Part shown: in pieces, positions 3,001-60,967 of the stretch
How positions within the stretch are numbered: the stretch's first letter is position 1
Layout: each line of letters opens with the position of its first letter
From: Heteronotia binoei
Lineage: Eukaryota
DNA length: 64,000 nucleotides
Assembly: GCF_032191835.1 (NCBI RefSeq)
Contig: NC_083236.1
Coordinates: forward strand, 1,860,001-1,924,000
Direction of reading: 5' to 3'
The notes under the pieces: generated by a model
Told to the model about the DNA's origin: nothing
What the model saw: only the letters and a program-made list of their open reading frames with translations
Database searches by the model: none
Program-made: the position numbers and the translations under genes

Positions 3001-4580
3001 CAAGATGACAAAGTCCTACACCACGACCTGGGACTTCTGCGATTGACTGCCTGGAAAATCAGTTTCTAGATTTTCCCACAGAAGTCTGACATGTTCTTCT
3101 CAATGCCAGAAAGCCTTCCATTAGAAAATCCTACTCTCAAAAGTGGAAGCGCTTTGCAGCATATGCTGCTCAACATAACTTCCTTTCTGAATCATCCTCT
3201 ATAGCTCAGATTCTGACCTACATTTTGTTTCTGTCAAACTCAGGCCTGACCTACTCCTCTCTAAAGGTTCACCTGGCCGCTATTTCAGCCCTTCATCCAC
3301 ACATTGAAGGACGCACTGTCTTCTCTCATTCCACAACACAAGCCTTCCTAAAGGGCATTCTGCATCTTCAACCTCCAGTTCGCCAACTGCAACCCACATG
3401 GAGGTTGTCTCTTATCCTGAGACAACTGATGAAACCCTCTTTTGAGCCAATGGCATCCATTCCAGCGCATCTCTTGTCTTGGAAGATGGCGTTGTTGGTG
3501 GCACTCACATCCAGCAGGGGAGTCAGCGATGTTTGTGCCTTTCGGACAGACCCCCCATACACTGTCTTCCACCATGACAGAGTGGTTTTACGCCCTGACC
3601 CAGCCTTCCTGCCAAAAGTCGTTTCACCTTATCACCTGGGAAAGTCGACCACCCTGCCGTCCTTCTTTCAAAAACTTAGTGATGCCGGGCAACGGACCCT
3701 ACACAATCTTGACGTATGTAGGGCCCTTGCTTTCTACATTGACAGGACACATCCCTTCTGTAAGGACTCTAGACTTTTTGTGGCTTATGGAACACATAAC
3801 CAGGGATACAAAATCTCAACCCAGAGGTTTTCAAAGTGGGTTGTAGTCGCCATTGCCTTATGCTACCAGTTGGCTAAACAACCCGTCCCTGAACACTTGC
3901 GAGCTCGTTCCACACAAGCTGTCCCCACATCATCAGCCTTCTGTAGAGGCATACTGATGGAGGACATCTGTGCCGCTGTGGTCTGGTGTTCTCCATCTAC
4001 ATTTGCCACGCACTACGCCCTAGACGTTTGTGCTCAGCGTGACATATCCTTTGGGGAGGCTATACTTCGCTCCATTTTTGACTGACACCTCCAGCTCCAT
4101 GCCTGTGAGTACAATATTTCTTATTACTTTTACGCAAGTTTAACATGTATTCTCCTATTACAGAACCAGCACCTGCCTCCATGCACTTCAGTTTACCAGT
4201 CACCCATGTGTGGGACTGCACAGAGATCACGATGAAGATAAACAGGTTGCTTACCTGTAACTGATGATCTTTGAGTGGTCATCTGTGTAGTCACACACGC
4301 CCGCCCAGCCTTCCCCGCTGCTGGCTTATTCTCTTCTTTACTCACAGTTTTCTCTACACAGAGGCTAGAAGAAACTGGGTGGGTGGAACGCCTCCCCCTC
4401 ACTCCAAGCATACACAGTGGATGCCTGCTCCCCAGATCGAGCGGGAATGCGCACCAAAACAAACGCCTAGGCTAGCTTTGAATTCTCTGAGGTTGGGTTC
4501 AATTCCAGGCGGAAAACCCATGTGTGTAACTGCACAGATGACCACTCGAAGATCTTCAGTTGCAGGTAAGCAACCTGTTT
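3001..4580 (+). mobile_element. DIRS1-type retrotransposon, 3' part (copy A): end of MT domain, tyrosine recombinase, ICR, right terminus
   Basis: YR ORF 3225-4085; ICR about 4203-4300 with circle-junction point at 4239|4240, complementary to the right end (about 4519-4580). Confidence 0.92.
3225..4085 (+). pseudogene. DIRS tyrosine recombinase (copy A), catalytic motifs decayed
   Basis: FLPKVVS and HY motifs present; RxxE region reads SSRGVSD; HSTR reads RSTQ. Confidence 0.85.
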
Positions 4581-8760: not shown

Positions 8761-9149
8761 CAGCTAGCAACTTTTCCATGTCGGACTGCCCAGGTACCAG
8801 GATGATGCAAACAGGGTCGCGCTTACCTGTAACTGTAGATCATTAGTGGTCACCTGTGCAGTCATGCACCCCTCCCTTCCTGCCCTGCTGGGAGCTCTTA
8901 GCTAAATCTGACGACTACATCTCAATCCAGCGGCCCAGACGAGGACCGAGGGAAGGGCACTCTGCCCCTTCCTTATCATGCTGGAAAAGATGGGAAAGAG
9001 GGTGGGGGATGGGGAGAGCGCCTTCAGATGTCTTTTGGGCTTTGAGAACTTTTCTGTTGTGGGCCTGCACGTGCACCCTGCCAATGTGTGACTGCATGGG
9101 GATCACTGGACCACTGTAACAACAGTTACAGGCAAGCGTAACCCTGTTT
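8761..9149 (+). mobile_element. Degenerate DIRS right-terminus remnant (ICR plus right end)
   Basis: aaacagggtcgcgcttacctgtaactg (about 8810-8836) is complementary to cagttacaggcaagcgtaaccctgttt (9123-9149); spacing matches the other DIRS copies. Confidence 0.7.
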
Positions 9150-12190: not shown

Positions 12191-14060
12191 CTTTCTCGTG
12201 GCACGCGTCATCGCCCCTACTACAACATTTATCTGCCTCCGCCCTTTTCCTACCTGCCTAGGAGTTGATCTTTTCAGACAAGAGGCCTACAAAATAGAGT
12301 TTGCGCAGATTCCAAACCAATCCGTGGTGATCACCACTCCCCCTTCCTTACCTCTTCTGGCGGAGGTGCACAACCTCCTACAGAAACAAGCCATAGAGAG
12401 AGTTCCGATGGAGGCCAGGACGGGAGGTTTTTACTCTCACTACTTCCTGGTCCCCAAGAGGGACGGGGGCTTAAGACCAATTATGGATCTTCGGAATCTG
12501 AACAAATTCATTCTGTACCAGAAGTTCAGAATGGCCACGCTGCAAATAATCCTGCCCCTCATCAACCAAGGGGACTGGATGGCGACCCTGGACCTCAAGG
12601 ATGCTTATTTCCATGTCAGCATCCATCCTTCGTTCAGGCGTTTCCTCAGGTTTGCAGTGGGTTCCCAGCACTTCCAGTTCAAATCCCTTCCTTTCAGCCT
12701 GTTCACTGCACCTCGGGTGTTTACGAAGATGATGAGCATTGTGGTTGCCCATCTCCATCTCCAGGGAGTTGTTGTCTTTCCATACATCGATGACTGGCTT
12801 TTTGTGGCGAAGTCGAGGGAAAGTTTGTCAACGCACATTGCCATCACTCTACGTCTTATCGACACCTTGGGGTTGCAGGTCAATTTGGAGAAATCTCACC
12901 TTACTCCGTCAAGGACAGTGCAGTTCATAGGGGCTTTGCTGGATACAAACCAGCATCGTGCATACCTGCCTTCGCAGAAGGCAAAGGACATTGTCGGTCT
13001 GGTACAACTGCTTCAGAGGCGAAAGTGGGGCACAGCACAGCAGCTTCAGCGGATGCTGGGGCTGATGTCGGCGACGACAAGCGTGCTACTTTTCACAAAA
13101 CAGAATGAGAGGCCTACAGTTGTGGTTTCTTCGCCAGTTTCGTCCACTCAGATACTCACCTCGAAAGAGGTTCACCATCCCATCCAGGACTCTTCAGACG
13201 CTACAGTGGTGGGAGTCAGAGAACAACATCTGCCAGAGAGCTCCCTTCCATCTGCCAACTCCTACTGTGACTATCACCACAGATGCTTCCTTGTGGGGTT
13301 GGGGGGCTCACATGGAAGGCCTGTGTGTGGGGGGGCCAGTGGCCGCCAAAACTGACTCAGTTCCACATAAACTACCTGGAACTGCTGGAGGTTCACTTTG
13401 CCCTACGCTCTTTCCGCCCCTTAGTGGCGGGGAAGACTGTAGTGCTGCTTACGGACAATACCACTGCCCTGTACTACATCAACAGGCAGGGAGGGACAGT
13501 GTCTCGTCGGCTCTGCGCATTGGCGATGGATCTCTGGTTGGAGTGTCTCCAGTACGACATCTTCGTGAAGGCGGCACATCTTCCAGGGGTCCTCAACATT
13601 CAGGCAGACTCCCTCAGCAGGGGTGGGGCTTCCCCACACGAGTGGGAACTGCAGTGGCGTTTTCTGAAGCCCGTATTCCAGCTTTGGGGGTAGCCGCAGC
13701 TGGATGTCTTTGCCACAGCCGAGAACAAGAAATGTCCCATGTTCTGTTCCAGAGGGGGAGTGGATCCAGCCTCTCTGGGAGACGGGCTCCTGCTTCCTTT
13801 GGAGGGTCAGTTCATCTACATGTTCCCGCCTCTGCCGTTGTTGACAAGGGTGGTCAACAAGATAGCAAGGGAGAGACCACGCTGCATCCTGGTGACTCCC
13901 TGGTGGCCTCGACAGAACTGGTTCTCGATCTTGTTCCAACTGTCGAGGGGGGTCTTCTAACAGTTCCCGGCAGAACCGGACCTCCTGTCAGCTCAGGGCG
14001 GGCATGTATTCCATCACAATGTGCCCCATCTGAAGCTGACAGCATGGTTCATCAACCAGT
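12191..14060 (+). pseudogene. DIRS B RT-RNase H-methyltransferase ORF, disrupted
   Basis: LDLKDAYFH, PYIDDW, TDASLWGWG, HINYLEL, TDNTT, ADSLSR, LDVFA, YMFPP. Confidence 0.9.
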
Positions 14061-15096
14061 AGGGTTCTCTGACAGGGTCCAGCAAGTTCTTATGAACAGC
14101 AGGAAACCGTCCACCGGTGCTTCCTATGACAGGAAGTGGCGGAGATTTACTAAGTTTTTGGTTGACCCGTCGGTCTCACCTAGCAGGGTGGGGTTGTCGG
14201 CAATTTTTAATTTTTTGTTGTCCCTAGTGGATGCAGGCCTGGTTTTCTCCTCCGTCAAAGTTTATTTGGCGGCAATATCTGCCTTCCATGATCCGGTGGA
14301 GGGGTACTCCGTTTTCGCACACCCTCAGTCCCAAAAATTTTTGAAGGGGTTGTTTAGACTGCACCCACGATCAAGATCACCCCCACAGTTGTGGGACTTG
14401 ACTTTAGTGCTGGACAAACTAACTCGTCGCCCCTTTGAGCCGATGGCCACGTGCTCTTTGCAGCTCCTGTCATGGAAGACTGCATTTTTTGTTGCCATTA
14501 CATCAGCACGTCATGTTGGGGAGCTCACGGCGATGCGGTGTGATTATCTTTATCTTGTTTTTCGAGAGGCTGGGGTTTCCCTGGCTCCAGACATTAGTTT
14601 TCTTCCGAAGGTGGTTTCTCAGTTTCACCTCAATTTAGAAGTTTGGTTGCCCACTTTTTACCCTTCCTCGGACGAGGAACGTAGGTTGCATGCTCTGGAT
14701 GTTAAGCGTGCTTTGTTGTTTTATTTGAAACGTTCAAAGATTTTTTGTAAGGACAAGCAGCTTTTTGCTTCGTATGCTGCTCCCAAGACAGGTTCCAGGA
14801 TTTCGTCTCAGAGGCTCTCAAAATGGCTCACTGAGATGATTAAGCTCTGTTATTTGTTGGCGAAGAAGCCGTTACCTGGGCCTGTTCGTGGACACTCCAC
14901 AAGAGCGATGGCCACATCGGTGGCGTTCCTGAGAGGCGTGTCCCTTTCTGATGTCTGCAAGGCTACCACCTGGTCTTCTCCGCATGCCTTCATGAAGCAC
15001 TACGCGCTGGACGTGCATGCTCAGCAGAGGACTCGGTTTGGAACTGTGGTGCTGCAAGCTGTTTCTTCCCGCCTCCAGGTATGTCTTGCTTGCTAG
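14057..15096 (+). pseudogene. DIRS B tyrosine recombinase
   Basis: SARHVGEL (catalytic R apparently mutated to H), GHSTRA, TWSS..F.KHY. Confidence 0.88.
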
Positions 15097-15739
15097 TCTC
15101 CCATTGGTGTGAAGCACAGAGACCATGAAGAAGATAGACAGGTTGCTTACCTGTAACTGTAGATCCTCGAGTGGTCATCTGTGCATTCACACTACCCGCC
15201 CTCCTTCCCCACTGCTCACGGTCTCCCTCCAGTAGGGGCTTCCAGCAGTCAGGAAGGAACTGACGGGATCCCCGTGCTGGCGCCGGTGGGCATGCGTACT
15301 GGGACGCCTGCGCATGCCCATTGGCGCCGAGCGCGGAAAAATCCCGGGCTTTTCAGATACCGATTCGGGGATCGGCGCAGGAGCTCTATCCCATGGGTGT
15401 GAATGCACAGATGACCACTTGAAGATCTACAGTTACAGGTAAGCAACCTGTCTTTATAGGAAGTGCTGACTACCAAAACTTCCCTTTTATGCTAAACCCA
15501 ATAATTACAAAGATATTTGTGTTACTGCATAACTTGCACCTTGGGTATTCTGCGAATGTTCTGAATTGCATAAACATAGATGTCCAGAAATGGGAGGTTT
15601 AGTTATTAAAATTGGTCTCTTTTTAAATGTGTACTTTTGTAAGACAGGGTTGTTTTCAAGTGCAGCAATTTTTTTAATAAGCAAAATACTTCCCTCCCCA
15701 GCAGTAATATTGCTTCCCCTTTTTATGTTTTCATTGTAG

Positions 15740-18980: not shown

Positions 18981-20860
18981 GTAAGCACTGGATTTTAAAT
19001 GACCTGCTAACTACAGATTTAGAAAAGAATAAACAAACAATGAGCATGAATTACAGAAGGCTGAAAGGACCAAGTCTTTCCTTTCATACGTTATATTTTA
19101 ATAATTGACACATTAAAATAATAATATGGTGAGTACATGTTTGCAGCCAGGGAGCCAGTACTGGGTATGGCTGTCTGTCAAGTGTACATTCGGTGGTAAA
19201 CCTTTGCATGCTAACATGTGAAAGTTCAGCCACCTGATTGGAAGCAGTCATAGTAGGGTTTGTACCACTTTGTACCTTGACCTCATACTACTGAGGAGTA
19301 TGAAAACGTCTTTCTGTGGGGAGTGATTTTCATCTCATTGTAATATAGTGAATTACTTATGTGGATTATCTCTGTCATGTTACAGTTTTCTGCGCCCTCA
19401 CTTCATCTCGGTTTATGTGACAGCAAAGTTGGCATCTGAGTTTATTTACAGCTCTGGTACTAGTGTCCATGTTCAAATTAGATGTTGTATTATGCATGAG
19501 ATGTTGTTTAAGATTTTAACATTGATTGGGTCAATATGTCAGGAGAAAGAGACTGAGTTTCTATATACTCTCAATTACTGTGCCCTGGATCTGATGGTAA
19601 CTGAACCTACCAGAGATGAGGTGATTCTGGACTTGGTTCTAAGTAAGGATCTGGTGAGAGATGTACATGTGATACCACCAGTTGGGAATAATGACCATAA
19701 TGCTATAAAATTTAACATTTATGTAAATAAGGAGTTGCCTCTAAAGACTAATGCAGCCACATTTAACTTTAGAAGTGTAACTTTTTTTAAATGGGCGTGT
19801 GAGGAAGAAACTGAAAGGAAAGGTAAGGAGGGTCAAATCCCTTTGGGAAGTTTGGAGACTATTTAAAACTACAATACTGAAAAACCATAGAGAATGTATA
19901 CCATAGATTAGAAAAGGTATGATTAGGTATTTAAAAAGGCCTGCATGGTTAATGAACAAAGTAATAAAAGCCGTAAAACATAAGATGGGTTCCTTCAAGC
20001 AGTGGAAGGCTAGTTCAAGTGAGGTCAATAAAAGGGAGCACAGGATTTGGCAAATTAAATGCAAGTCAGTAATCAAACAGGCAAAAAGAGACTATGAGGA
20101 ACATATCACACACACACAAGAAGACTAATAATAAAAATTTCTTTAAATACATTAGAAGCAGAAAATCAGCCAGGGAGGCAATGGGACCCTTGAATGGCCA
20201 AGAAGTAAAAGGATTACTAAAAGATGATATTGAAATGGCAGAGAAGCTGAATGCTTTTTTTTTCTTTTTTTTGGGGGGGGGGGGGTGGTGCGGCCTCTGT
20301 CTCCACTATCAAAGATGAGAGATGTTTGTCCACTCCAGAACTGCAGATTTCAGGAGGGGTGCTGAAAGACCAGAGTCAGATTGAGGTGATGAGAGAGGAG
20401 GCTGTACAAGTGATAGACAAATTAAAAACTGACAAATCATCAGGGCCAGGTGGCATACATCAAAGACTTCTGAAAGAACTCAAATGTGGATCTCCTGACA
20501 AAAATTTGCAATCTGTCACTAAAATCTGCCTCCATACCTGAGAACTGGAAGATAGCTAATGTAATCCCCATCTTTTAAAAAGATTCCAGAGGAGATATGG
20601 AAAATTACAGGCTGATTAGTCTAACATAGATACTGGGTAAGTTGGTGGGATCTGTTATTAAAGATATAATTAGTTTATTAAATATAGTAAGGAAAGATCT
20701 TGTCTTACTAAGCTTTTAGAGTCCTTTGAGGGAGTGAACAGACATGTGGACAGGGGTGACCCAATAGATGTTGTTTACCTAGACTTCCAGAAAGCTTTTG
20801 ATAAAGTTCCTCACTGAAGGCTCCAGAGTAAGCTCAGCAGTCATGGGATAAGAGGACAAG

Positions 20861-21152
20861 ATGGAGTGGAAAAAGTTCAGAAGATACGTAGAAAAAGAGT
20901 GGAAAATAAAAGGACATTGGACAATTTTTGATAATGACTAAGTACAAGAGGGAGGAGGAAAATAATTTTGGTTCTTATTAATTAAGGGTACCTTTAATAT
21001 TAAGATTTTAAGTATATAACTCCGGCGGGGGTCAAGTAATGGGGGGAGGGGTGGGTAGAAAGTAATATATGGGATAGATAAAAAAGTAATTATTAATGAT
21101 GTAAGAAATTGAAATTTATTACCATATGTTACTAATAAAATTGTTTGAAGCA
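20861..21152 (+). mobile_element. 5'-truncated L1 3' end, same family as the L1 at 1-2995
   Basis: Roughly 90% or more identical to 2701-2993; flanked by the repeat AAGAGGACAAGATG (20850-20863 and 21153-21166). Confidence 0.9.
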
Positions 21153-32822: not shown

Positions 32823-35800
32823 ATCTTCTTCGTGGTCTCTGTGCAGTCCCACACATGGGTTTTCCCGCCAGGATGAACCCGACCTCGGAGATTTTAAAAG
32901 CTAGCCTAGGCGTTATTTTTGGTGCGCGTTCCCTCCTGCTCTGGGGAGCAGGCATCCACTGCGCATGCCTGGAGCGAGGGGAAGGCGCTCCACCCACCCA
33001 GTTTCTTTCTAACCGCCGCCCGGGATAGTCTTACCTCACTGCGTCTCCTTCGTCTACTAGCTTTTGCCTACCTTATTTCTTCCGACCGACCTTCAGTCTT
33101 CTATCGTCCTTTGCTTTTCGTCCTTCTTCTTACTGGTATCGTAAAAAAAAAACCCAACCCCCCCAAAAAAGATAACTTTACCCGCTTTCTATCACCTCAT
33201 TTCTTTCCCTTCTCCTACCCCACCTCCCCCCCCCCGGGCGTATGGACGGAAAGGACGCTAAAATCACTTTTAAAAAGTGCACGTGTTGCGGAGCAAAAAT
33301 CCCCACATCCGACAGCCACTCGCTGTGCCTGTTCTGTGTGGGGGAAGGCCACAGAACGGACGTCTGCACCCACTGCACTCAATTCGGAAAACAGGCCAGA
33401 AAAAATCGCACCGCAAGACTGAAAAGCCACCTTTTGGAATCCGCCCTTCGACCCACCATGTCGCATTCCACTGGACCCCAAAGATCGCCACCCTCCCTAA
33501 CTCCGCAAGGAGACGTAGCGAAACCGGCAGCTTCAGTGGCCTTGGCTCCCAGTAAGCCTAAGTCCAGCAAACATACAAAGAAATCACATGACTCCAAGAA
33601 GAAACACTTGGATTCGTCATCATCTAAGGCCCATAAGGAGCCAAGAAAAACATCGGACTCGACTCCATCGGATCCTAAGGCACCTGAGTCCGTGGTTTCT
33701 ATGGCGACTACCACTCTGAGATCGCCCCCGACTCCTGCACAACGATCACTACCGATAGACAGGATTGAAGAAGAGGTTATCAGAATCCAGTCTCGCTTGC
33801 CTTTCATCCACGAATCCATGCCGGAAGACTTCCTCGCCGAAGAGCCAATAGAGCTCTCAACCCAAATGCAAGGGCACCAGATCGATATGCGTTCCTTCCG
33901 TGACATATCCGCTCCTAAGAAACTTAAGAGCATCACCTTCTCACCGCCACACCGGCTAGCTTCTCGCCATCGGGAACCGTACACCCATCGGTACCGTGAG
34001 AGATCCCCTAGCAGGGAAAGGGAAAGGTACCTCCATACACACTGGTACCATGAAAGGTCTCCAAGTCGAGAAGGGGACCGCTACCGCTACTATAGCCGAT
34101 CCCGATCCCCTTCTAGGTCACCACATGGCCGTTACTATGTGACCTCGAGATCTCCCTCAGTAGACTATCGTCACCAATACTCCGACCATCACTATTCTTG
34201 GTACTGTACCGAACGGTACCAAGAGGCACAACCTCGACTCCATGAGGACTCTTCTCAATATCAGGAAGCAGTCCATTCACATATGAAACTTGCCTCAACG
34301 ACTCCGTCGACATCGACTTCTAAACATTAACCAACTCAACCAAAACCAAAATCTACTTCTACGGTACCCGTTCTGCCTGCACATGATGTCCCTGAGGAGG
34401 ATTCTGAAGCCGAAACATCGGAGTCATCACATTCAGTCTCCTCTCCAGCATCACCTGCATCGGATATTGCTAAACCAGCTGAGTTGTCTCCCTCTGAAGG
34501 AGCAAAAACCTATCTGGACTTAATCTCTAACATGGCCACCACTCTTAACATCAAACTAACAACTGATGCCCCGAAGATATCTGATGTGGTCCATGACCTT
34601 GTCCACTCCGATCTGCCTGCTGGATCTTTTCTACCAATGCTGCCGGTCCCCCTTGAAGCCCTGAAAGAAGCCTGGGATAAGCCAGCTTCCATTCCTCTGA
34701 TGTCTAAACGAATAGAATTGTTATACAAGATCCATGCACCAGAATCTAAATTCTTGTTTAATCATCCTGCCCCAAACTCGATGATGTACATTCATCCTCC
34801 AAGTCTAAGCAAACACGTCACCCCGTACCTCCTGAGAAAGAAGGAAGGAAACTGGACACACTAGGTAGAAAACTATATTCGATCTCAAGAGCGACAGCCA
34901 AGATCAACAACTACCTTGCTTACTTCGCTGCCTACTCCTACAATATCTCTTCTCAACTGAGCTCTCTGATAACAGCATTACCAGAAACCTCCCAGAAACA
35001 AGCCTCTAAACTATTACAGGAGCTCAACAGGATAAGCAAACAGCAGATCAATACAGTGCGACACTCCGTCGGATGCTCTTCCAAGGCAATGGCTGCTTTT
35101 GTTGCATTACGCAGACATGCTTAGCTACGTTCATCCTCGTTACAGCCAGACATAAAATTCAAGATCGAAGACCTTCCCTTCAACGGGCAAGGCTTATTCA
35201 ATGCTACCACTGACGACATCTTGACCACAGTAGATGATAGCCGTAAAAGAGCCAAGAGGCTTGGTGTAAATCAACAACAGCCTCAAACTTACAGACAAAG
35301 GCCATGGAAGACACCGGCCTACAAGCGCCCTCGCTCGCCCAGGCAGACCGACTACTGGAAGCGTAAGGCCCCACCAACTAAGCAACCATTCCACCAACGT
35401 CAACGACCCCAACCAGCCAAGAAGACCGCCACGGCTACTAAACAGTCTCTTTGACTTCCCCAGCCTACCAACACAGTACTACCATCCTACTGCACCCAGA
35501 CTTCTACCATTCTACCCTATGTGGAGGTCAATAACAACGGACTCTTGGGTTCTAACTATCATTCACAGAGGCTACTCAATAGAGTTCGCTTCGCCCCCCA
35601 AAAACCATCACTTCATACCTACATCTCCCTCCCCTCCAAGAGGAAATTGCTGCTCTGCTGGCCAAAGCGGCCATAGAACCAGTTCCACCTCAATACCACC
35701 ACACGGGGTTCTATTCCCGATATTTCCTAGTCCCAAAGAGGGATGGAGGACAACATCTGATACTAGATCTGCGCAAACTCAACAAATTTATCCAACACAA

Positions 35801-38800
35801 AAAATTCCGCATGATTACTCTGCAGTCCATTCTGCCTCTAATCCCCAAGAACGCCTGGATGGCCCTCATCAACCTTCAGGATGCATATTTCCATCTCACA
35901 ATTAACCACTGTCACAAAAGATTCCTACAGTTTGCTGTCGGGAACGACCATTATCAGTTCCGAGCACTTCCATTTGGCCTATCTACGGCACCGAGAATTT
36001 TCACAAAATGCATGGCAGTGGTAGCTGCATCTCTTTGTCAGCAGAGGATTGCAATTTACCCGTACATAGACGACTGGCTTATAGTAAGCCCTTCAAGGGA
36101 AGAACTGGAACAGGACATTTCGACCACCTTATAGCTCCTGTCAAATCTAGGATTGCAAGTCAACAGCCAGAAATCCAACCTCACTCCTACCCAAGACATT
36201 CAATTCATAGGAGCGCATCTATCCATGGTGGATCACAAGGCTTACCTACCTACAGACAGAATTATCAGCATCCAATCATTGGCTGCCACTATAATCTCTC
36301 AACCAACTCAAACAGCCCTCACCTTCCAGCGCATGTTAGGCCTCATGGCAGCCACAACCGCTGTTTCACCCCATGCAAGACTTCGCATGAGACCCCTACA
36401 ACTTTGGTTCGTTCGCACGTTCTACCCACAATGTCACTCACAACAAACCCTTTTAACGGTTCCACGACACATACTGCCACCACTGGACTGGTGGGCAGTA
36501 CAAGACCATCTCTTCACAGGAATGCCATTCCTACGGCAACCTCCATCAGCCTTCATCACTACAGACGCTTCGAGATGGGGTTGGGGAGCCCATTTCGATA
36601 CACTGACAGTGCAAGGACAGTGGACGGCATACGAGAAATCTCTCCACATCAATTGCCTAGAACTCCTGGCAGTACACAGAGCCCTCAAGTCCTTCCTACC
36701 ATCGCTTCACGGTCGCCATGTCCAGGTAACATCAGACAATGTGGCGACTGTGTTCTACATCAACCGGCAAGGAGGGACTGCATCCACTTTTCTCTGCAAA
36801 AGAGCTCTAGCTCTCTGGTATTGGAGTATTGCACACTACATACACCTTACGACTGTGCACTTACCAGGAGTCCAAAACACCTGAGCAGACACCCTGAGCA
36901 GACAATTGGTCAACGACCATGAGTGGTCACTTCACAAATCATACCTCCAACCAGTCTTCTTGAAGTTCGGAACCCCCCTTATCGATGTGTTTGCCTCCCC
37001 GGACAATACCCAATGCACTCAATTCTATATGTGAGGCCCCCCTTCGAACCAGTCTGCGGGAGATGCCTTCCTCCAACAATGGAATGGACCACTTCATTTC
37101 CTCTTTCCACCCATTCCATTGATAACGAGGATACTCCAGAAGATGCAATTAGACCAAACCAACTGCATTCTGGTCACACCATGGTGGCCCCGCCAACCGT
37201 GGTTTACAACACTTCTCCTTCTCTCCAACAATGTATTCCATCGGTTTCCCCCCAATGCGGGACATCCTTTCACGGCAGAATGGCAAAGTCCTGCACCACG
37301 ACCCAGGTCGCCTTTGACCAACTGCATGGAGAATCAATTTTTGGAATTCCCTGAGTGAGTTAGACATGTTCTGCTGAATGCAAGAAAACCATCTACTAGG
37401 AAGTCTTACACTCTGAAGTGGAGACAATTCACCACCTATGCGGCTAATCACAACTTTCATCCTCTGTCATCCTCCATGTCACAGATCCTATCCTATACTC
37501 TCTCCCTCTCTGAAAATGGACTTACTTATTCCTCACTCAAGGTGCATTTAGCAGCCATTTCAGCCTTCCATCCTCACATAGAAGGACACACGGTGTTTTC
37601 CCATCCTGCTGCAAAATCCTTTCTAAAGGGCATCTTACATCTCCATCCCCCAATCCGCCAATTGTACACTACCTGGAGCTTATCTTTGGTCCTAAGCCAA
37701 CTGATGAAACCTCCCTTTGAGCCCATGGCATCTATACCATTACATCTTCTATCGTGGAAGACAGCACTGCTTGTGGCGCTGGGAAGAGAGTCAGTGACAT
37801 ATGCGCATTTCGAGCAGATACTCCCTATACCGTTTTTCACCACGATAGGGTAGTCCTTCGACCAGACCCCACCTTTCTCCCAAAGGTAGTGTCACCATTC
37901 CATCTACAAAGAACAACCACATTACCTTCTTTCTTTCAGAATCCCACAGATAGAGGCCAAAAAGCCCTTCATAATCTGGATGTACGCAGAGCCCTTGCAT
38001 ACTACATAGACAGAACTAGTTCTTTCCACAAGGACTCGAGACTCTTTATTGCATATGGCTCTCATAAAAGAGGATAAAGAATATCGACTCAGAGACTCTC
38101 GAAATGGCTGGTTGTTACCATTGCGTTATGCTACAAATTGGCAAAGCAACCTGCCCCAGAGCATTTACGAGCTCACTCTACGAGAGCTTTGTCTACATCC
38201 TCAGCCTTTTCCAGAGGCGTACCCATGGAAGACGTCTGTGCTGCCGCAGTCTGGTCCTCCACATCGACGTTCGCCACGCACTACGCAATCGACGTCCGTG
38301 CACAGCAAGACTCATCCTTTGGCCAGGCTGTACTCCGCTCCATCTTCGATTGAAGCTTACAGCCTCACCATTGGTAAGTGCCCTCTTACCGTATTACCTA
38401 ACTGTCATCTTGACTGATATGCATTAATCTATGAAGTTCCTTTTCAGGACCAGCACCCACCTCCGTGCAATTCAGCTTATCCGTCACCCATGTGTGGGAC
38501 TGCACAGAGACCACAAAGAAGATAAACAGGTTTCTTACCTGTAACTGATGATCTTTGAGTGGTCATCTGTGTAGTCACACACGCCCGCCCAGCCATCCCC
38601 GCTGCTGGTTATTTAGTTTAACCTACACTTCTCTTACCACTAGGCAGCGGCGGGAAAGAAACTGGGTGGGTGGAGCGCCTTCACCTCGCTCCAGGCATGC
38701 GCAGTGGATGCCTGCTCCCCAGAGCGGGAGGGAACGCGCACCAAAAATAACGCCTAGGCTAGCTTTTAAAATCTCCAAGGTCGGGTTCGTCCTGGCGGGA

Positions 38801-38867
38801 AAACCCATGTGTGTGACTGCACAGATGACCACTCGAAGATCATCAGTTACAGGTAAGAAACCTGTTT
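32823..38867 (+). mobile_element. Full-length DIRS1-type retrotransposon (copy C), same subfamily group as A
   Basis: Left end ATCTTCTTCGTGG; ITRs about 32823-33018 and 38645-38840; ICR about 38487-38585 (junction 38523|38524); gag 33242-35454, RT-RH-MT about 35455-37390, YR about 37390-38353, all with lesions. Confidence 0.95.
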
Positions 38868-38885
38868 TACTTTTCCCAGCAAGAC

Positions 38886-54142: not shown

Positions 54143-57100
54143 ATGTCCACGCAACTCAAAATATTGTCGCTAAATGTAAATGGATTAAACTCTCCTCAAA
54201 AAAGGAAACGAGTCTTTTCACAACTTAATAAATTTAAGGCAGATATCATATGCCTACAGGAAACACATATAAAACAAAAAAACGAAGCATTGCTTCAAAA
54301 TAAGAGGTTAGGGAAGGCAATAATCTCTTCAGAGAAAGACAAGAAAAAAAAGAGGTTTGGTTACATACATCATAGAAGACATACAGGCGAAACTGGTTTT
54401 TGAGGCCGAAGACGCAAGATATCAGGGAATTCAAATTACTAAGGGACAACAAAAATTCTTCCTCATAAATATATATGCACCCAATGGAAATCAGGGAACC
54501 TTTTATAAGAAGCTGCAGTGGGCGGTTGATGCTCATAAGTTGGATAGCATTTGCATAATTGGAGATTTTAACGCTGTGACCTGCCCAAAAGTAGATAAGG
54601 AATATGGTAAGGAAAGATTGAAACATAGACATTCTGCATGTAAAGTTCTTCCAGATGGGTTTTTCAGAATGGCGGATGAATATGTTTTAGTGGATGCCTG
54701 GCGAACTCTAAATCCAAACAAGAAAGACTTTACCTTTTTTTCAAACAAACACAGCTCTTGGTCTCGGATTGATATGTGCTGGGTCTCAGCTTCATTAATG
54801 AAAGAGGTAGAAGAAGTGGAAATTCAGCCCAGAACAGTCGCAGATCACAGCCCACTTATGATTTACATTAAAGGAGAAAGGAAAAGGCAAGGCTGGAGAA
54901 TGAACCCGAGATTGATGAACAATAAGAAATTTATACAGTATGTTGAAAAAGAAATGAAAGATTTCTTTCATTGGAATATTAGGGAAGAAACAACATTTAT
55001 GACGGTCTGGGAGGCAAGCAAAGCTTTCTTTAGAGGCTTAGTAATAAGCTTCAATGCACAAAAGAAACGGGAAGAAAGTAGAAAGTTAAAGGAAATGACC
55101 GAAGCAATAAAAGGCAGAGAAAAACAACTGAAAGAAAATCCAACGATACAGCAGATAAAGGATGAGATCAAAATTCTTCAGCATAAGAGCCACCTACTTT
55201 TTCTGGAGGAGATGGAGAAAAAAATACGATTTGCCAAACAATATTTTTTCGAAAATGCCAATAAGCCTGGAAGATGGCTCGCATACAAAATTAGGAAAGA
55301 ACGAGATAATAAAATTATTAAAATCTTGAAAGATAAAGAGGGAGTGCATAAACACACACAAGAAGAAATGAAAGCGATAATAAAGGACTTTTATACTCAA
55401 CTTTATGGATCTAGGGAAATGGATAAAAAACAACAAGAAGACTATCTGATGAGAAAGTCATTGTCAAAATTAACACCAGAACAACAGGAGGGACTGAATC
55501 GTCCAATAGCGGTGTATGAAATTGAAGAAGTTTGGAGTAAACTGAAGAAAAACAAAGCTGCTGGTCCAGATGGTATTCCAGCGGAATACTATATTGTATT
55601 TAAAGAGATTATAATTAATCATTTAAAAAAGGTCCTTGAAGAGGTCTGGTCGAAAGCAGATATTTTGGATTCTTGGAAATTGGCGAATATAGCACTTATT
55701 CCTAAAACAACTCAAGGGTCAGATGAGGTTAAGAACTACAGGCCAATTTCACTACTCAATGTGGACTATAAAATCTATTCAGCTATTCTGGCCAATAGGT
55801 TAAAAAAGGTACTAAACAAACTGATACATACGGATCAAACTGGGTTTCTCCCAAAAAGACATATGAGTACGAACTTAAGAACTATACTAAATGTTCTAGA
55901 GTATTATGAAATTTCTGGGAAGAAGAAATTAGCTCTGTTTTTTATAGATGCGGAAAAAGCATTTGACAACCTAAATTGGGAGTTTTTGTTTGGTCAATTA
56001 AGGATGATGGATTTTGGAGAAGATTTTATTCGGAATGTGAAAGCAATATACAAGGATCAAAGGGCAAAGATAATTGTGAACGGAGACCTCACTGAAGAAA
56101 TTAATCTAAGGAAAGGTACTAGACAGGGATGCCCACTTTCCCCTTTACTTTTTGTCTTATCCCTGGAAATATTACTGGAGTCCCTAAGAAATAATGATAA
56201 AATCAAGGGTTTAGAGATTAAAGATGAAATCTACAAAGTGCTGGCTTATGCAGATGACCTGGTTTTAATTGTACAAGACCCAATAGAATCAACTGAGGAG
56301 GTTTTAAAGGAATTAAATGAATACGGGCAGGTTGCAGGGCTAAAGGTTAATTATAACAAGTCAAAGGTTATAACAAAAAATATGTCTACTTATGATATCC
56401 AGGTTGTTGAAAAACGAACGTGTTTCCAGAGGGAATCGAAAATTAAATATTTAGGGATAATGCTGAGTAATAAATGTAGCAAAATATATGAACTTAATTA
56501 TGAACCTCTTTTAAAAGAACTTGAAGATAAGTTAAAGCAATGGCGAATTTTACAACTTTCTTTTATGGGCAGAATTGCTTTAATTAAGATGTATATATTA
56601 CCCAAGGTGTTATTCTTATTTCAATCGGTTAACTTCGCAGCTAGGAAAGTCTTTTTTGTTAAGTTAGAACAAATGATTAGATCCTTTATATGGTTGGACA
56701 AGAAACCGAGGATTAGAGGGAAAATTCTAATGGATACCAAGGATAATGGAGGCCTAGGAAAGCTATCATATAGCATGTGGTACACTCTGGTTGATTGATT
56801 GGATAGGACTCGAAAATAAAAGAATATTAGTGTTGGAAGGTTTTAATTTGTTAAATGGTTGGCATTTTAATTTATGGTATGCTCAGAAAACTCAGAAATA
56901 CTTTGTTAATCACCTGATTCGTAAGGGGATTTATAATGTGTGGTTGAAGTTTAAAAGGAAAATTTATAACAAAGTCCCAAGATGGATATCGCCGAATGAG
57001 GCCTCAATACAGCCACAGCTAAGGGATTATGCAAAGATAATTAGATACCAGGATTTACTAGATGGGAACGACAGAATAAGAGGGAAAGATGACTTGGAGG

Positions 57101-57867
57101 AGAAAGGTATAAAATTAGATTGGTGGTCTATGACACAGGTAATGGCTAAATTTAACAAGGATAAGCTTTTGGGGTTTACCAATTCTAGATTTGATTTTGA
57201 TAAAATTTTGCAAAATAAGGTAGATAAAATAATCAAAAAAACATACAACTACATGATCCAGATGAAATTAGAGGATGAAACCGTCAAAGAAGTAATGCTG
57301 AAATGGTCTAAAAACCTGGCAAAAAATATAGATTTAGAAACTTGGTCGTTATTCTGGAAATTAAATTACAAGGTTATTAAGCCGATTAATTTCAGGGAAA
57401 ATTTTTTTAAGTTATTTCATAGATGGTATGTCACCCCTGCTCAACTAAATAAGATCAACCCGACTACTCCACCAAAATGTTGGAAATGCGGGACAATGAT
57501 AGGCTCATTTTTTCACCTTTGGTGGACCTGCACAGTGGCAAAGAAATTCTGGGTTAAAATTTACGAAATGCTGAAAAAGATGTTAAATATAAACTGGCAG
57601 TTTAAACCCGAAATTATGCTACTCTCTTTAATGCGAAAGGAAGTCCCCAGAGAGGATGAACATTTGATAATATATGTACTAACAGCGGCAAGAATCGTAT
57701 ATGCTAAGCACTGGAGACAGAAAGAATGTCCAGAAATAGAGGAGGTTGTAGATAAAGTTTTACAAGCTGCGGAGATGGATATTCTATCCAATATGTTGAA
57801 AGGGGCATTAAAACAAGAAACAACAAATAAATGGGAGAAGTTTTATAAATGGTTAAAAAAAGAATGA
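54143..57867 (+). pseudogene. L1 ORF2 (APE, RT, Cys-rich C-terminus), apparently full length, two frameshifts (about 54350 and about 56780)
   Basis: LNVNGLNSPQKR, GDFNA, DAEKAFD, GTRQGCPLSP, YADD, CWKC..H.WWTC. Confidence 0.93.
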
Positions 57868-58236
57868 GGTACACAGGTTTGCAGATATGAGATAGATACA
57901 AGGTATTGTCATACTAAATAATATTCACTACTTATTTTTTGTTATAGTAAATATAGATAAAAACCGGATACGAAGATATGTGATGTTAAATTGATTTAAT
58001 ACTGCATTCAGTCTCAAGTGGAAGAACAGAGATGGGTTACAGCTCTGATTATAGTTTTGTTTTTATTTACTCATTTCAGTCAATGTAAGCCTATCTGAAG
58101 GCGAACAGTAATGGATATATTGTATTGTAAATTTTTGGTTTGAAATAAATGTTTCGTAAGTCTGAAAAAAAAATGAGGGGCCTTTGCGTAGGGGACCGAT
58201 GGCCCAGCCATCATGCCCACCACCATATAAACTTTT

Positions 58237-58920
58237 TTGGAGTTACTGGCCATTTTCCACTCCATCCAGTCCTTCCAGACCCTTCTAAGGGGCAAGACGG
58301 TAGCACTCATGACAGACAACACAACTGCCATAGCATACATAAACAGGCAGGGAGGTACAGTATCCCGCAGACTCTGCAAACTTGCCATGATCATCTGGGA
58401 GATGTGCAGGTCATTGGGGGTGTCGTTCCTGGCAACTCACCTCCCGGGGGACCTAAATGTCTGTGCAGACTTCTTCAGCCGAGGGGGAGCTTCGCTTCAC
58501 GAGTGGGAACTCAACTGGGAGTTCCTGCAACCCGTCTTCCATCGATGGGGGACTCCTGCACTGGATGTCTTTGCCACACGCAGCAACAGAAAATGTGAAC
58601 TATTCTGCTGCAGAGCAGGAGCGAACCCGATGTCCCTCAGGGATGGTCTCCTCATCCCGTGGAATTATCACCGGGTGTACCTGTTCCCCCCCCCCATTCC
58701 CCTGATTACCAGGGTGGTGCAGAAGATCTTGAGGGAAAGGCCAGTGGGCATCCTAGTAACGCCGTGGTGGCCGAGGCAGCACTGGTTCTCCCTGGTTCTG
58801 TGTCTCACCAACGGCAGGTTTCACCACTTCCCTCAGGTTCCAAACCTCCTGCTCTCTCATCAGGGGCAGGTTGTGCACCACGATGTTCCACATCTAAAGC
58901 TGACTGTGTGGCGCCTGTAA
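58237..58920 (+). CDS. DIRS D RNase H C-terminal part plus MT domain, uninterrupted
   Basis: LELLAI, TDNTT, ADFFSR, LDVFA, YLFPP, PWWP. Confidence 0.85.
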   Translation: MELLAIFHSIQSFQTLLRGKTVALMTDNTTAIAYINRQGGTVSRRLCKLAMIIWEMCRSLGVSFLATHLPGDLNVCADFFSRGGASLHEWELNWEFLQPVFHRWGTPALDVFATRSNRKCELFCCRAGANPMSLRDGLLIPWNYHRVYLFPPPIPLITRVVQKILRERPVGILVTPWWPRQHWFSLVLCLTNGRFHHFPQVPNLLLSHQGQVVHHDVPHLKLTVWRL

Positions 58921-59942
58921 AATCTCAGCTATCTGAGAGAGCTCAGCTCATCATACTAAACAGCAGAAAACCCTCTACCCGGAAATCGTATTTGTACACA
59001 TGGTCGAAATTCGTCCAATTTTCCGCGGACTATGCCTCAGAGCCGGGGGTGGCAGGATTGCGTATAATTTTTGACTTTATGCTTTCTCTGGTGGATCAAG
59101 GCTTAACAGTGTCCTCGGTGCATGTTTACTTGGCAGCCATCTCGGCTGAGCACTCCCAGATTGATGGACATTCCGTCTTCACCCACCCTGATACCAAGAG
59201 GTTTCTCAAGGGCATTGCTAGACTGTATCCTGCGGTGCGGGTACCTGCCCCAGCTTGGGACTTGTCCCTGGTTCTTCGGGCTCTAGCGGGGAAGCCTTTC
59301 AAACCAATGGCCACCTGCTCTCACCAGCTACTGACTTGGAAGACAGCCTTCCTGGTAGCTGTTACATCTGCCAGACGTGTAGGCGAGCTGGCGGCACTTC
59401 GATGCGATGCTCCTTATTTGTGTTTCACTGCTGAGGGTGTGGTACTTCGTCTTGATATCACCTTTTTACCCAAGGTGATCTTGTCTTTTTACCTTAATAC
59501 TGAGATCTGCTTGCCGATTTACTTCCCCAATTCGACTAATGAGTCTGAGCGTAGGTTGCATGCCTTGGACGTGAAGAGGGCGCTGCTCTTCTATCTGCAT
59601 CGTTCTAATCCCTCTCGGAGGGACTCCAGACTTTTCGTTTCTTATGCAACCGCCTCTTTAGGGCAGAGGATATCGTCTCAGAGGCTGTCGAAGTGGATTA
59701 CGGACACCATCCGGCTTTGTTATCTTCTGAGTAAAACGCCTCTCCCAGGACCGATCTGGGCCCATTCCACGCGGGCGATGGCAACCTCGGCAGCGTTTAT
59801 GAAAGCTGTTCCTCTTCAGGACATTTGCAAGGCTGCCACCTGGTCTTCCGTGCATATCTTCGTGAATCACTATGCGCTGGACTTGCGGCTACGCCAAGAC
59901 TCTTCGGAGGGCCGTGCTGTGCTTCAGTCTGTCTCCTGCTGA
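58659..59942 (+). CDS. DIRS D tyrosine recombinase, open, with catalytic motifs intact
   Basis: SARRVGEL, AHSTRA, TWSS..F.NHY. Confidence 0.88.
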   Translation: MELSPGVPVPPPHSPDYQGGAEDLEGKASGHPSNAVVAEAALVLPGSVSHQRQVSPLPSGSKPPALSSGAGCAPRCSTSKADCVAPVKSQLSERAQLIILNSRKPSTRKSYLYTWSKFVQFSADYASEPGVAGLRIIFDFMLSLVDQGLTVSSVHVYLAAISAEHSQIDGHSVFTHPDTKRFLKGIARLYPAVRVPAPAWDLSLVLRALAGKPFKPMATCSHQLLTWKTAFLVAVTSARRVGELAALRCDAPYLCFTAEGVVLRLDITFLPKVILSFYLNTEICLPIYFPNSTNESERRLHALDVKRALLFYLHRSNPSRRDSRLFVSYATASLGQRISSQRLSKWITDTIRLCYLLSKTPLPGPIWAHSTRAMATSAAFMKAVPLQDICKAATWSSVHIFVNHYALDLRLRQDSSEGRAVLQSVSC

Positions 59943-60967
59943 TGGACCGTCGCACCCTCCTCCAGGTAGGATTTGAGCTTGTTAGTCTCCCATCAGTGTG
60001 ATGCACAGAGACCACAAAGAAGATAAACAGGTTTCTTACCTGTAACTGATGATCTTCAAGTGGTCATCTGTGCAGTCACACTACCCGCCCTCCTTCCCCT
60101 CTGCTGCCGGTCCATCTTTGGGGCTTATGCAGCGGCCAGAAGGAACTGGCGGGATGTCCGCCCCCGTCTCAGTGAGCATGCGCAGTGGGGCTTCTGGGCA
60201 TGCGCACTGGGACGTCGGCGCGGAAATCCACAGCTTTGAAGTTTACTGATCGAGATCGGCGCTGGCGCCTTATCCCCATCAGTGTGACTGCACAGATGAC
60301 CACTCGAAGATCATCAGTTACAGGTAAGAAACCTGTTTTAGATGCTGCTTTGATCTCTCATGCTTGACAATTAATGAGCAATTATAATATTTACTAAGTT
60401 TCTGCTATGTAATATTAACCAATTCTTGAAAAATATGATTTTGTTCCTTTGTGTTATACATGGAAAATATAACTCACTCTACCCAGCACATTTCTAAATG
60501 ATGCCATTTCCCCCAAACAGCTCCTGTTCCCCTGTGCCGCCTGCAGGGTCCTTTCAGGATCTGAAGGCAGTCCACTACTTCTTCACTCGTGGTTTCCTTC
60601 TTTTCTTTTTCTTTTTTACTATCTGATTGCTTCTCATAATTACGTTCCATCTAGCAAAGCCCCAAACACTGCATTTCTATGACATTCATTCCATACCCAA
60701 AGCTCGGTTGTTCTTCAAGAACCCTTTTCTACATCCAAAGCAAGTAGAAGTTTTTAAACTAAACAATAACATTAAAACATAGTTAATTGACATGAGATCT
60801 CTTCGTGCAGTCTATTTTTAGGTTGAAATCTAATATTATAAAGCGTACCTAAAAATGTACTCTTTGTTATATTCAGGTTTTTGAAAATATTTAGTCTGCA
60901 ACTTGAGATTGACTGTTGCCCTGTTAAGCAATATACTTTTCACGTTCCAGATGGCAAGTTCCAGTTT

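What the first reader, a model, noticed from the sequence alone, without database searches (positions are those of the whole stretch)
38374..38447. Apparent spliceosomal intron inside a DIRS1 retrotransposon, between the recombinase stop and the ICR
In copy C, 20 nt after the YR stop (38351-38353), there is TG|GTAAGT...branch-like CTAAC/TTAAT...GTTCCTTTTCAG|GACCAGCACCCACCTCC, a 74-nt segment. Copy A has the same layout in the same place with unrelated internal sequence, so only the splice signals and the downstream flank are conserved. Copy D lacks the segment and reads TGA-TG|GACCGTCGCACCCTCCTCC (59940-59963), which resembles the spliced C junction TTG|GACC; this suggests precise intron loss or gain. 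Copy B has a deletion here and is uninformative. A sense-strand intron should be purged by reverse transcription unless the replicated RNA stays unspliced, so this implies separate spliced and unspliced DIRS RNAs (inference). The junction is under 50 nt from the YR stop, so by the 50-55 nt rule a YR mRNA would escape NMD, whereas spliced RNAs ending translation at the gag or RT stop would not. That could act as an expression switch (inference). I cannot confirm whether this has been described before.
Basis: partly seen in the sequence, partly recalled or inferred. Interest (0 to 1): 0.82.

Follow-up and report, generated by a model that had tools for sequence, protein, structure and literature searches.

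The report
Candidate retained intron in DIRS retrotransposon
Two long-diverged copies of one reptile DIRS retrotransposon family carry a short stretch just after the recombinase gene that keeps full splicing signals while its interior has randomised, so it looks like a real retained intron, but no spliced RNA has been seen.

Summary
Copy C has a 74-nt GTAAGT...CAG segment (38374-38447) 20 nt after the recombinase (YR) stop. Copy A has a 59-nt GTGAGT...CAG segment (4105-4163) 19 nt after its stop.

For an intron:
- A and C are separate lineages that diverged under purifying selection (pN 0.15, synonymous sites saturated).
- The interiors are no more alike than shuffles. Both keep a consensus donor, a TTAAY branch-like motif exactly 20 nt before the 3' end, a pyrimidine tract plus CAG, and low G+C.
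- The 3' end abuts a conserved motif.
- In random spacers this layout occurs in under 1 in 10,000.

Against:
- No spliced junction was seen.
- An RNA-library contig 93% like C runs through the segment unspliced.
- Eight other DIRS families lack the segment but have a donor-like GGTNNG at the same place with no consistent acceptor, so donor-likeness may have another cause.
- Only two genomic copies exist.

"Precise loss in D" is not testable. D and B are different families (about 48% YR identity), and the tree is a polytomy.

Verdict: candidate retained 3'-UTR intron, about 0.5. The closest analogue is the 75-bp Penelope intron.

The scan holds sibling notes on copy A and other DIRS splice-like motifs in this genome. 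None was followed up.

The parts
32823..33020 (+). Left inverted terminal repeat of element C
   Evidence: Inverted repeat I1 (183 nt, 95%) with 38643-38825. Its outer 38 nt are complementary to 38486-38523.
38351..38353 (+). Stop codon (TGA) of the tyrosine recombinase ORF, copy C (ORF degraded by 4 upstream stops)
   Evidence: The C-terminal AHSTRA and W..F..HY motifs align with other DIRS recombinases.
38354..38373 (+). 20-nt 3'-UTR tail between the stop and the donor, not conserved with copy A
   Evidence: 9 of 20 identical to A, z 1.6 against shuffles.
38374..38447 (+). Candidate intron, copy C, 74 nt. Donor G|GTAAGT at 38374-38379; TTAAT at 38424-38428 with A38427 20 nt before the 3' end; pyrimidine tract 38437-38445; AG at 38446-38447.
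   Evidence: G+C is 0.38 against 0.50-0.58 in the flanks. The interior is unlike A. No stable fold (z -0.75). X1 RNA-library contigs cover it colinearly.
38448..38485 (+). Conserved C-rich 'module 2' (GACCAGCACCCACCTCC plus 21 nt). It is the orthologue of the motif that follows the stop directly in other DIRS families, but its GGTNNG has decayed to GTGCAA.
   Evidence: 79% identical to A, z 9.5. Summed similarity to 8 other families gives z 10.
38486..38582 (+). Internal complementary region (ICR) of element C
   Evidence: 38486-38523 is complementary to the left end and 38519-38582 to the right end. 96% identical to A.
38643..38872 (+). Right inverted terminal repeat of element C, ending ACAGGTAAGAAACCTGT...
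4083..4085 (+). Stop codon (TGA) of the recombinase ORF, copy A. The frame is open for 286 aa, but the HxxR motif reads RSTQ.
4105..4163 (+). Candidate intron, copy A, 59 nt. Donor T|GTGAGT at 4105-4110; TTAAC at 4140-4144 with A4143 20 nt before the 3' end; pyrimidine-rich 4150-4161; AG at 4162-4163.
   Evidence: G+C is 0.29. Picked up by the window-wide intron-like scan.
4164..4201 (+). Conserved module 2 of copy A (AACCAGCACCTGCCTCC...). Its GGTNNG has decayed to ATGCAC.
4202..4298 (+). ICR of copy A
   Evidence: 93 of 97 identical to C.
59940..59970 (+). Copy D (a different DIRS family): stop TGA, then TG, then GACCGTCGCACCCTCCTCC, A, GGTAGG. No segment is present.
15064..15096 (+). Copy B (a different DIRS family): C-rich motif, then A, then GGTATG at 15078-15083. 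No segment is present, and the ORF runs on to TAG at 15094-15096.

Best explanation
The segment is a short U2-type (GT-AG) spliceosomal intron in the 3' UTR of one lineage of DIRS1-like retrotransposons, the A/C family. It lies 19-20 nt after the recombinase stop and 38 nt before the ICR.

Selection has kept its donor, branch site, pyrimidine tract and acceptor while the interior drifted freely.

Because it persists through retrotransposition, splicing must be partial or the copied RNA must be the unspliced one (inferred). The spliced RNA would then serve as messenger, perhaps gaining export or translation from the exon-junction complex, as proposed for the 75-bp Penelope intron (inferred by analogy, PMC2377424).

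Shown: the anatomy, the pattern of conservation, and the persistence of the segment in two lineages and in a third relative.

Not shown: that it is ever spliced.
For: 1. Both copies have GTRAGT, TTAAY with its A exactly 20 nt before the 3' end, a pyrimidine tract plus CAG, and low G+C.
2. A and C diverged under purifying selection to saturation: 194 codons, 73% amino-acid identity, pN 0.15, pS 0.81, third positions 60% different. Shared non-coding features therefore reflect constraint rather than recency.
3. The interior is indistinguishable from shuffles (z 0.14), while the motif starting at the first base after the AG scores z 9.5 and the ITR z 21.
4. In shuffled spacers, acceptor and donor occur together in 6-8 per 100,000.
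5. The stop-to-donor distance is kept at 19 and 20 nt although that stretch is not conserved.
6. A third relative, 93% like C, also carries the segment: X1 record 7 lies colinear over 37867-38513.
7. There is a precedent. The Penelope 75-bp intron is retained through transposition, has splice sites conserved between elements 67% identical, and is needed for expression (PMC2377424).
Against: - No spliced junction 38373/38448 appears among the joints listed for three RNA libraries. In X1, depth inside the segment (20.9) is close to depth just upstream (24.9), so most of the signal is unspliced. The table hid 36 low-depth joints, and contigs drop rare forms.
- No intron-less copy of the same family is known.
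- Copy A is only 59 nt, short for a vertebrate intron.
- Eight related families have a donor-like GGTNNG after the stop with no consistent acceptor. The donor may therefore be conserved for a non-splicing reason.
- There are only two genomic copies, both defective.
Confidence: 0.48

Rival explanations
1. The segment is an unspliced, lineage-specific spacer whose ends carry motifs conserved for other reasons. The GTRAGT is the A/C version of the GGTNNG motif that follows the recombinase stop in all related DIRS families. That motif could be a U1-binding site acting on 3'-end processing, or a signal in cDNA or recombination. The pyrimidine-CAG end would belong to the conserved C-rich module.
For: - GGTNNG (G-1, G+1, T+2, G+5) follows the C-rich motif in 8 of 8 other families, 15-25 nt before the ICR, where no intron fits. 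Acceptor-like sites downstream are inconsistent or absent.
- In A/C the orthologous copy has decayed (GTGCAA, ATGCAC) while a new GTRAGT sits upstream. This looks like relocation of one motif.
- The right terminus and the ICR carry the same GGTAAG/CTTACC inside a palindrome ACAGGT-N5-ACCTGT, so GGTAAG has non-splicing uses in these elements.
- The RNA-library contig is unspliced.
Against: - The pyrimidine tract, CAG and TTAAY at -20 have no counterpart in the other families, where coding sequence occupies that position.
- An acceptor abutting module 2 occurs in only 0.7% of shuffles per copy, yet is present in both saturated lineages.
- Position-wise, the conservation of the generic motif is itself what a 5' splice site shows.
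- One family in organism A seems to read AGGACC there (loose end at 38484), so the generic motif is not universal.
Confidence: 0.3
2. The splice signals are real but are used in other combinations. For example, the 38374 donor could join acceptors after the ICR (38617, 38643) or host exons when the element sits in a gene. Alternatively, the 38447 acceptor could be used from upstream donors. In that case the 74-nt unit is not the functional intron.
For: - Pyrimidine-AG sites lie between the ICR and the right ITR in A (4347, 4361) and C (38643).
- An X2 RNA contig has a joint whose downstream side starts at 38449, one base from the acceptor boundary (table 5c).
- Earlier notes of the scan propose ICR-bracketing GT..AG pairs.
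Against: - Post-ICR acceptors are not conserved across families.
- The X2 joint comes from 38868, which is not a donor. It carries 6 extra letters and has depth 3.9, so it may be an assembly chimera.
- The branch-like motif at -20 and the tract fit the 38447 acceptor paired with the near donor.
Confidence: 0.12
3. The resemblance is chance. An AT-rich, fast-evolving spacer happens to begin with GTRAGT and end with CAG in two related copies.
For: - There are only two copies.
- About one in six GTRAGT sites in the window has some acceptor-like partner 50-110 nt away.
Against: - Joint probability is 6-8 per 100,000 per copy in shuffles.
- The interior is saturated, so shared ancestry cannot carry the signals.
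- The branch-motif distance is the same, and the stop-to-donor distance differs by one base (19 and 20 nt), in both copies.
Confidence: 0.1

Closest known systems
The 75-bp intron of Penelope (Penelope-like elements, Drosophila virilis)
   Same: - It is a short UTR intron (75 bp against 74 bp) carried by a retroelement and retained through transposition.
- Donor and acceptor are conserved between elements about 67% identical, while both spliced and unspliced RNAs exist.
- Retention is explained by a benefit of splicing for expression (PMC2377424).
   Different: - Penelope's intron is in the 5' UTR, 46 bp after the transcription start, in a different retroelement class (GIY-YIG, target-primed).
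- Its splicing has been shown by RT-PCR.
- Here the intron is in the 3' UTR of a tyrosine-recombinase element, and splicing is unshown.
Spliced and unspliced RNA pools of LTR retroelements (BARE1 of barley; retroviral subgenomic RNAs)
   Same: One element makes an unspliced RNA that is copied and a spliced RNA that is translated, so the intron survives in the genome copies (PMC3735527).
   Different: In those elements splicing removes coding sequence to change which protein is made. Here the removed piece is non-coding and no ORF changes.
DIRS1-like retrotransposons as described (ITRs, ICR, gag / RT-RH-MT / YR)
   Same: Elements A and C have the ITR-ICR architecture, and their YR is related to reptile DIRS recombinases.
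   Different: - The DIRS1 overview (PMC3266345) and the Xenopus DIRS study (PMC9210276) contain no mention of introns; for the overview the term 'splic' was also searched and absent.
- In Dictyostelium, an artificial intron placed in DIRS-1 is spliced out and lost in new copies (PMC7192593).
- Eight related families lack the segment.
Mirtrons (short hairpin introns)
   Same: Length class of 59-74 nt.
   Different: No hairpin. Fold z-scores are -0.75 and -0.08.

Membership tests
U2-type GT-AG spliceosomal intron | 5' splice site matching MAG|GTRAGT | tested here: met
   C has TTG|GTAAGT and A has CCT|GTGAGT.
U2-type GT-AG spliceosomal intron | Branch-point motif yUnAy 18-40 nt before the 3' end | tested here: met
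   TTAAT (A at 38427) and TTAAC (A at 4143), each exactly 20 nt before the last intron base.
U2-type GT-AG spliceosomal intron | Pyrimidine tract followed by YAG | tested here: met
   C has ttccttttCAG and A has ttctcctattaCAG. This occurs in 0.7% of shuffles at that position.
U2-type GT-AG spliceosomal intron | Length compatible with vertebrate splicing | tested here: inconclusive
   74 nt in C is near the lower end of vertebrate introns. 59 nt in A is unusually short (own knowledge). A is a dead copy and may carry deletions.
U2-type GT-AG spliceosomal intron | Removal from RNA: reads joining the two exons that are absent from DNA | tested here: inconclusive
   No run holds the locus (best share 0.10). 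Contigs of three RNA libraries laid at 80% likeness show an unspliced relative and no listed 38373/38448 joint, but 36 joints were not shown.
U2-type GT-AG spliceosomal intron | Signals conserved while the interior drifts | tested here: met
   Interior z 0.14 and flank z 9.5, with synonymous sites saturated. Based on two sequences only.
DIRS1-like retrotransposon | Inverted terminal repeats plus an internal region complementary to both termini | tested here: met
   I1 is 183 nt at 95%, and I2 and I3 link 38486-38582 to both ends.
DIRS1-like retrotransposon | Tyrosine recombinase in place of a DDE integrase | tested here: met
   - The best relatives are reptile proteins that their sources name 'Tyr recombinase' or 'core-binding' domain proteins.
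- AHSTRA and HY motifs align.
- Pfam and PDB sequence searches found nothing.
DIRS1-like retrotransposon | Reverse transcriptase / RNase H upstream of the recombinase | tested here: met
   RVT_1 in copy B (E 3.7e-22). C 35682-36395 is 54% identical to it. Copy A lacks this part.
Intron-retaining retroelement (Penelope type) | Intron present in many transposed copies together with spliced transcripts | not testable with these tools
   Only two genomic copies and one RNA-library contig are available. No collection held closer relatives.

The most novel reading that the evidence does not exclude
Vertebrate DIRS elements as a group place a functional 5' splice site or U1-binding site within about 30 nt after the recombinase stop: GGTNNG in 8 of 8 other families, GTRAGT in A/C. 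The A/C lineage has turned it into a complete, selectively retained 3'-UTR intron. Splicing then sorts transcripts into a messenger pool and an unspliced replication pool. The junction is kept under 50 nt from the stop, so the recombinase message escapes nonsense-mediated decay.
Probability: 0.2. Interest if true: 0.75.

Novelty: new variant of a known kind. Interest (0 to 1): 0.55.

Why it matters
Retroelements copied from RNA should lose introns, so a conserved one shows how the element separates the RNA it translates from the RNA it copies. That has been worked out for retroviruses, BARE and Penelope, but nothing is known for tyrosine-recombinase retrotransposons, whose expression and priming are largely unexplored.

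A retained 3'-UTR intron in DIRS would give a simple handle on that question: one RT-PCR amplicon. It would also be a second, independent case of the Penelope-type 'intron kept because splicing helps expression'. In addition, it would bear on annotation, because such signals can create chimeric host transcripts when elements sit in genes.

Tried and rejected
- **Hairpin intron (mirtron) or structured RNA.** Fold z-scores were -0.75 and -0.08, and Rfam gave no match. Rejected.
- **Segment copied from the ICR or the ITR end.** Marginal for C (p about 0.02) and absent for A. Not supported.
- **Tandem duplication of the 'C-rich + GGTAAG' module creating GT...CAG by accident.** Module 2 is clearly the orthologue (z 8-10). 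The stretch from the stop to the end of the segment resembles the generic module only marginally (z 1.7-2.1). Left open.
- **Segment as a repeat or TE fragment.** No other match in the window.
- **'ICR-removing intron' from the generic donor.** Acceptors after the ICR are inconsistent across ten elements.
- **Search for more family members.**
  - Three word-based protein searches and one exhaustive search gave nothing above 51% identity.
  - Exact-pattern scans of metagenome, viral and prokaryote collections found nothing.
  - One contig look-up failed for lack of a slot.
  - L007 proved to be a different architecture.
- **Intron loss in D.** Rejected as untestable, because D is another family and the tree is a polytomy.

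Full report
**1. What is there**

The window holds several DIRS1-like retrotransposons.

Element C spans 32823-38872.
- Its left ITR is 32823-33020 and its right ITR is 38643-38872.
- The internal complementary region (ICR) is 38486-38582. Its first part pairs with the left end and its second part with the right end.
- The coding capacity is degraded, with four stops in the recombinase region alone.

Copy A is a 3' part only (about 3021-4575). Its recombinase frame is open for 286 aa, but the HxxR motif reads RSTQ.

Copies B (10168-15450) and D (3' part 58173-60340) are also DIRS elements.

- In C, TGA lies at 38351-38353. A 20-nt tail follows, then G|GTAAGT at 38374. The segment ends ttccttttCAG at 38447.
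- In A, TGA lies at 4083-4085. A 19-nt tail follows, then GTGAGT at 4105. The segment ends at CAG 4163.

**2. A and C are one family; B and D are not**

- A and C share 73% nucleotide identity over the 3' region, and 72-79% amino-acid identity in the recombinase.
- A's recombinase is only 48% identical to those of B and D. It is equally far from every protein found in two very large collections, where the best match is 51%.
- A recombinase tree puts A+C together (100/100) on a long stem, in an unresolved polytomy with six other lineages.

Comparing C with D is therefore a comparison across families, not between copies.

**3. The generic architecture**

I read the stop-to-ICR interval in eight other families: B, D, an ENA contig (L001), Gopherus (L002) and four further reptile assemblies (L003-L006).

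- All eight lack the segment.
- Each shows the stop, 0-15 nt, a C-rich motif (for example CACCCNCCTCC), a donor-like GGTNNG (G-1, G+1, T+2 and G+5 invariant in 8 of 8), about 15-25 nt, and then the ICR.
- The ICR core lies 66-95 nt after the stop in the six fetched loci, against about 165-180 nt in A and C.
- The 38 nt after the segment in A and C ('module 2') are the clear orthologue of this generic module (z 7.7 and 10.2).
- Their GGTNNG has decayed to ATGCAC and GTGCAA.

A/C thus carry about 80-95 extra bases between the stop and the module, and the only consensus donor now sits in the extra part.

**4. The evolutionary signature**

Over 194 aligned codons, A and C have pN 0.15 and pS 0.81. 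Codon positions 1, 2 and 3 differ at 20%, 13% and 60%. The two lineages therefore separated long ago and evolved as functional elements, and neutral sites are saturated.

Against that background:

| Region | A-versus-C similarity |
|---|---|
| Stop-to-donor tail | z 1.6 (not significant) |
| Segment interior | z 0.14 (like shuffles) |
| Module 2 | z 9.5 (79% identity) |
| ICR | 96% identity |
| ITR | z 21 |

Both lineages nevertheless keep:
- GTRAGT at the 5' end;
- TTAAY with its adenine exactly 20 nt before the 3' end (38427 and 4143);
- a pyrimidine tract plus CAG abutting the first base of module 2;
- low G+C (0.38 and 0.29, against 0.50-0.63 in the flanks);
- a stop-to-donor distance of 20 and 19 nt.

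In 400,000 shuffles of each spacer, an acceptor at that exact place occurs in 0.7%, a suitable donor in 0.5-1.1%, and both in 6-8 per 100,000. A strict scan of the whole window on both strands finds seven intron-like layouts, and only the two from the donor in A have a branch motif. C was missed by that scan only because of an AG 12 nt before its 3' end.

This is the pattern expected of an intron under selection. It matches what was reported for the Penelope intron, whose splice sites are conserved between elements 67% identical (PMC2377424).

**5. RNA evidence**

No public run holds the locus. The best share of sampled words is 0.10, so the source species could not be examined.

I laid the contigs of three RNA libraries (X1-X3) and one DNA run (X13) on 33000-38880 at 80% likeness.
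- Organisms A and B carry relatives of the whole element.
- One X1 contig (664 nt, depth 18, about 93% alike) lies colinear over 37867-38513 and so contains the segment.
- Two X1 contigs cover 38383-38384.
- X1 depth there (20.9) is close to that at 38304 (24.9).
- No 38373/38448 joint is among the 15 joints listed. However, the list is ranked by depth and filled by the DNA run, 36 joints are hidden, and contigs drop minor forms.

The unspliced form therefore exists in an RNA library, although it could be pre-mRNA or DNA carry-over. Efficient splicing is unlikely. Partial splicing is neither shown nor excluded.

**6. Weighing**

For a real intron: the full signal set, its conservation at saturation, the exact abutment on a conserved module, the low G+C, and the Penelope precedent.

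Against:
- There are no junction reads.
- There are no processed (intron-less) copies of the same family.
- Only two copies are available.
- A's segment is 59 nt.
- The donor-like motif is generic in DIRS elements that have no acceptor to pair with.
- GGTAAG/CTTACC also sits inside a palindrome at the right terminus and in the ICR, so it plainly has non-splicing roles in these elements.

My confidences are about 0.48 for a functional retained intron and 0.30 for an unspliced spacer with motifs kept for other reasons. I give 0.12 to signals used in other combinations and 0.10 to chance.

**7.

- 'Separate spliced and unspliced RNAs' follows logically if the intron is real, and it has precedents (PMC2377424, PMC3735527).
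- The artificial intron in Dictyostelium DIRS-1 shows what happens otherwise: it is spliced out and lost from new copies (PMC7192593).
- The 50-55 nt NMD argument fits the conserved 19-20 nt distance, but it is untested. RNAs on which ribosomes stop at gag already have multi-kilobase 3' UTRs.
- 'Precise loss in D' should be dropped. Parsimony over the polytomy favours a single gain on the A/C stem, but the root is not resolved.

**8. Novelty**

Two DIRS surveys (PMC3266345, PMC9210276) contain no occurrence of 'intron', and PMC3266345 none of 'splic' either. My full-text searches found no report of a natural intron in a DIRS element. The older Goodwin and Poulter papers are not in the library, so prior description cannot be fully excluded.

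Intron-bearing retroelements are known. This would be a new variant of that kind, in a new element class and at a new position.

Noticed in passing
window 59965-59970, 15078-15083; L001 4020-4026; L002 4210-4216; L003 4793-4799; L004-L006 17-31 nt after the stop: Every other DIRS family examined (8 of 8) has a donor-like GGTNNG (G-1, G+1, T+2, G+5 invariant) right after a C-rich motif, between the recombinase stop and the ICR. None has a consistent acceptor downstream. In A/C the orthologous site has decayed. Its function is unknown.
   Followed up: partly
window 38846-38862 and 38526-38542 (also 4242-4258, 15138-15154, 60027-60043): The 'CAG|GTAAG donor' at each DIRS right end lies inside a palindrome ACAGGT-N5-ACCTGT, which is mirrored in the ICR. 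This offers a non-splicing reading (a recombinase or cDNA-pairing site) of that motif.
   Followed up: partly
window 38868 -> 38449 (read-laying table 5c, run X2): An RNA-library contig (depth 3.9) joins the element's right end, then six extra letters (TACACA), to position 38449, one base past the candidate acceptor boundary. It may be an assembly chimera or a diverged relative. Unexplained.
   Followed up: no
window 3900-3925 (copy A recombinase): Copy A keeps a 286-aa open frame, but the conserved AHSTRA (HxxR) motif reads ARSTQA. The recombinase is probably inactive despite the open frame.
   Followed up: partly
window 8775-9140: A fifth DIRS fragment, 5'-truncated inside its ICR, with a right ITR ending ...cagttacaggcaagcg. 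It is uninformative for the segment.
   Followed up: no
window 33030-33035 and 38633-38638: In element C, a CTTACC lies about 10 nt inside each ITR inner boundary, in the same orientation. It is absent at the corresponding place in A.
   Followed up: no
window 1915-2781, 57091-57864, 20858-20938: The ORF just upstream of copy A's recombinase is not a DIRS gag. It matches an ORF inside the L1-like insertion that interrupts copy D (35% over 259 aa), so copy A is probably truncated by another element.
   Followed up: no
   Followed up: no
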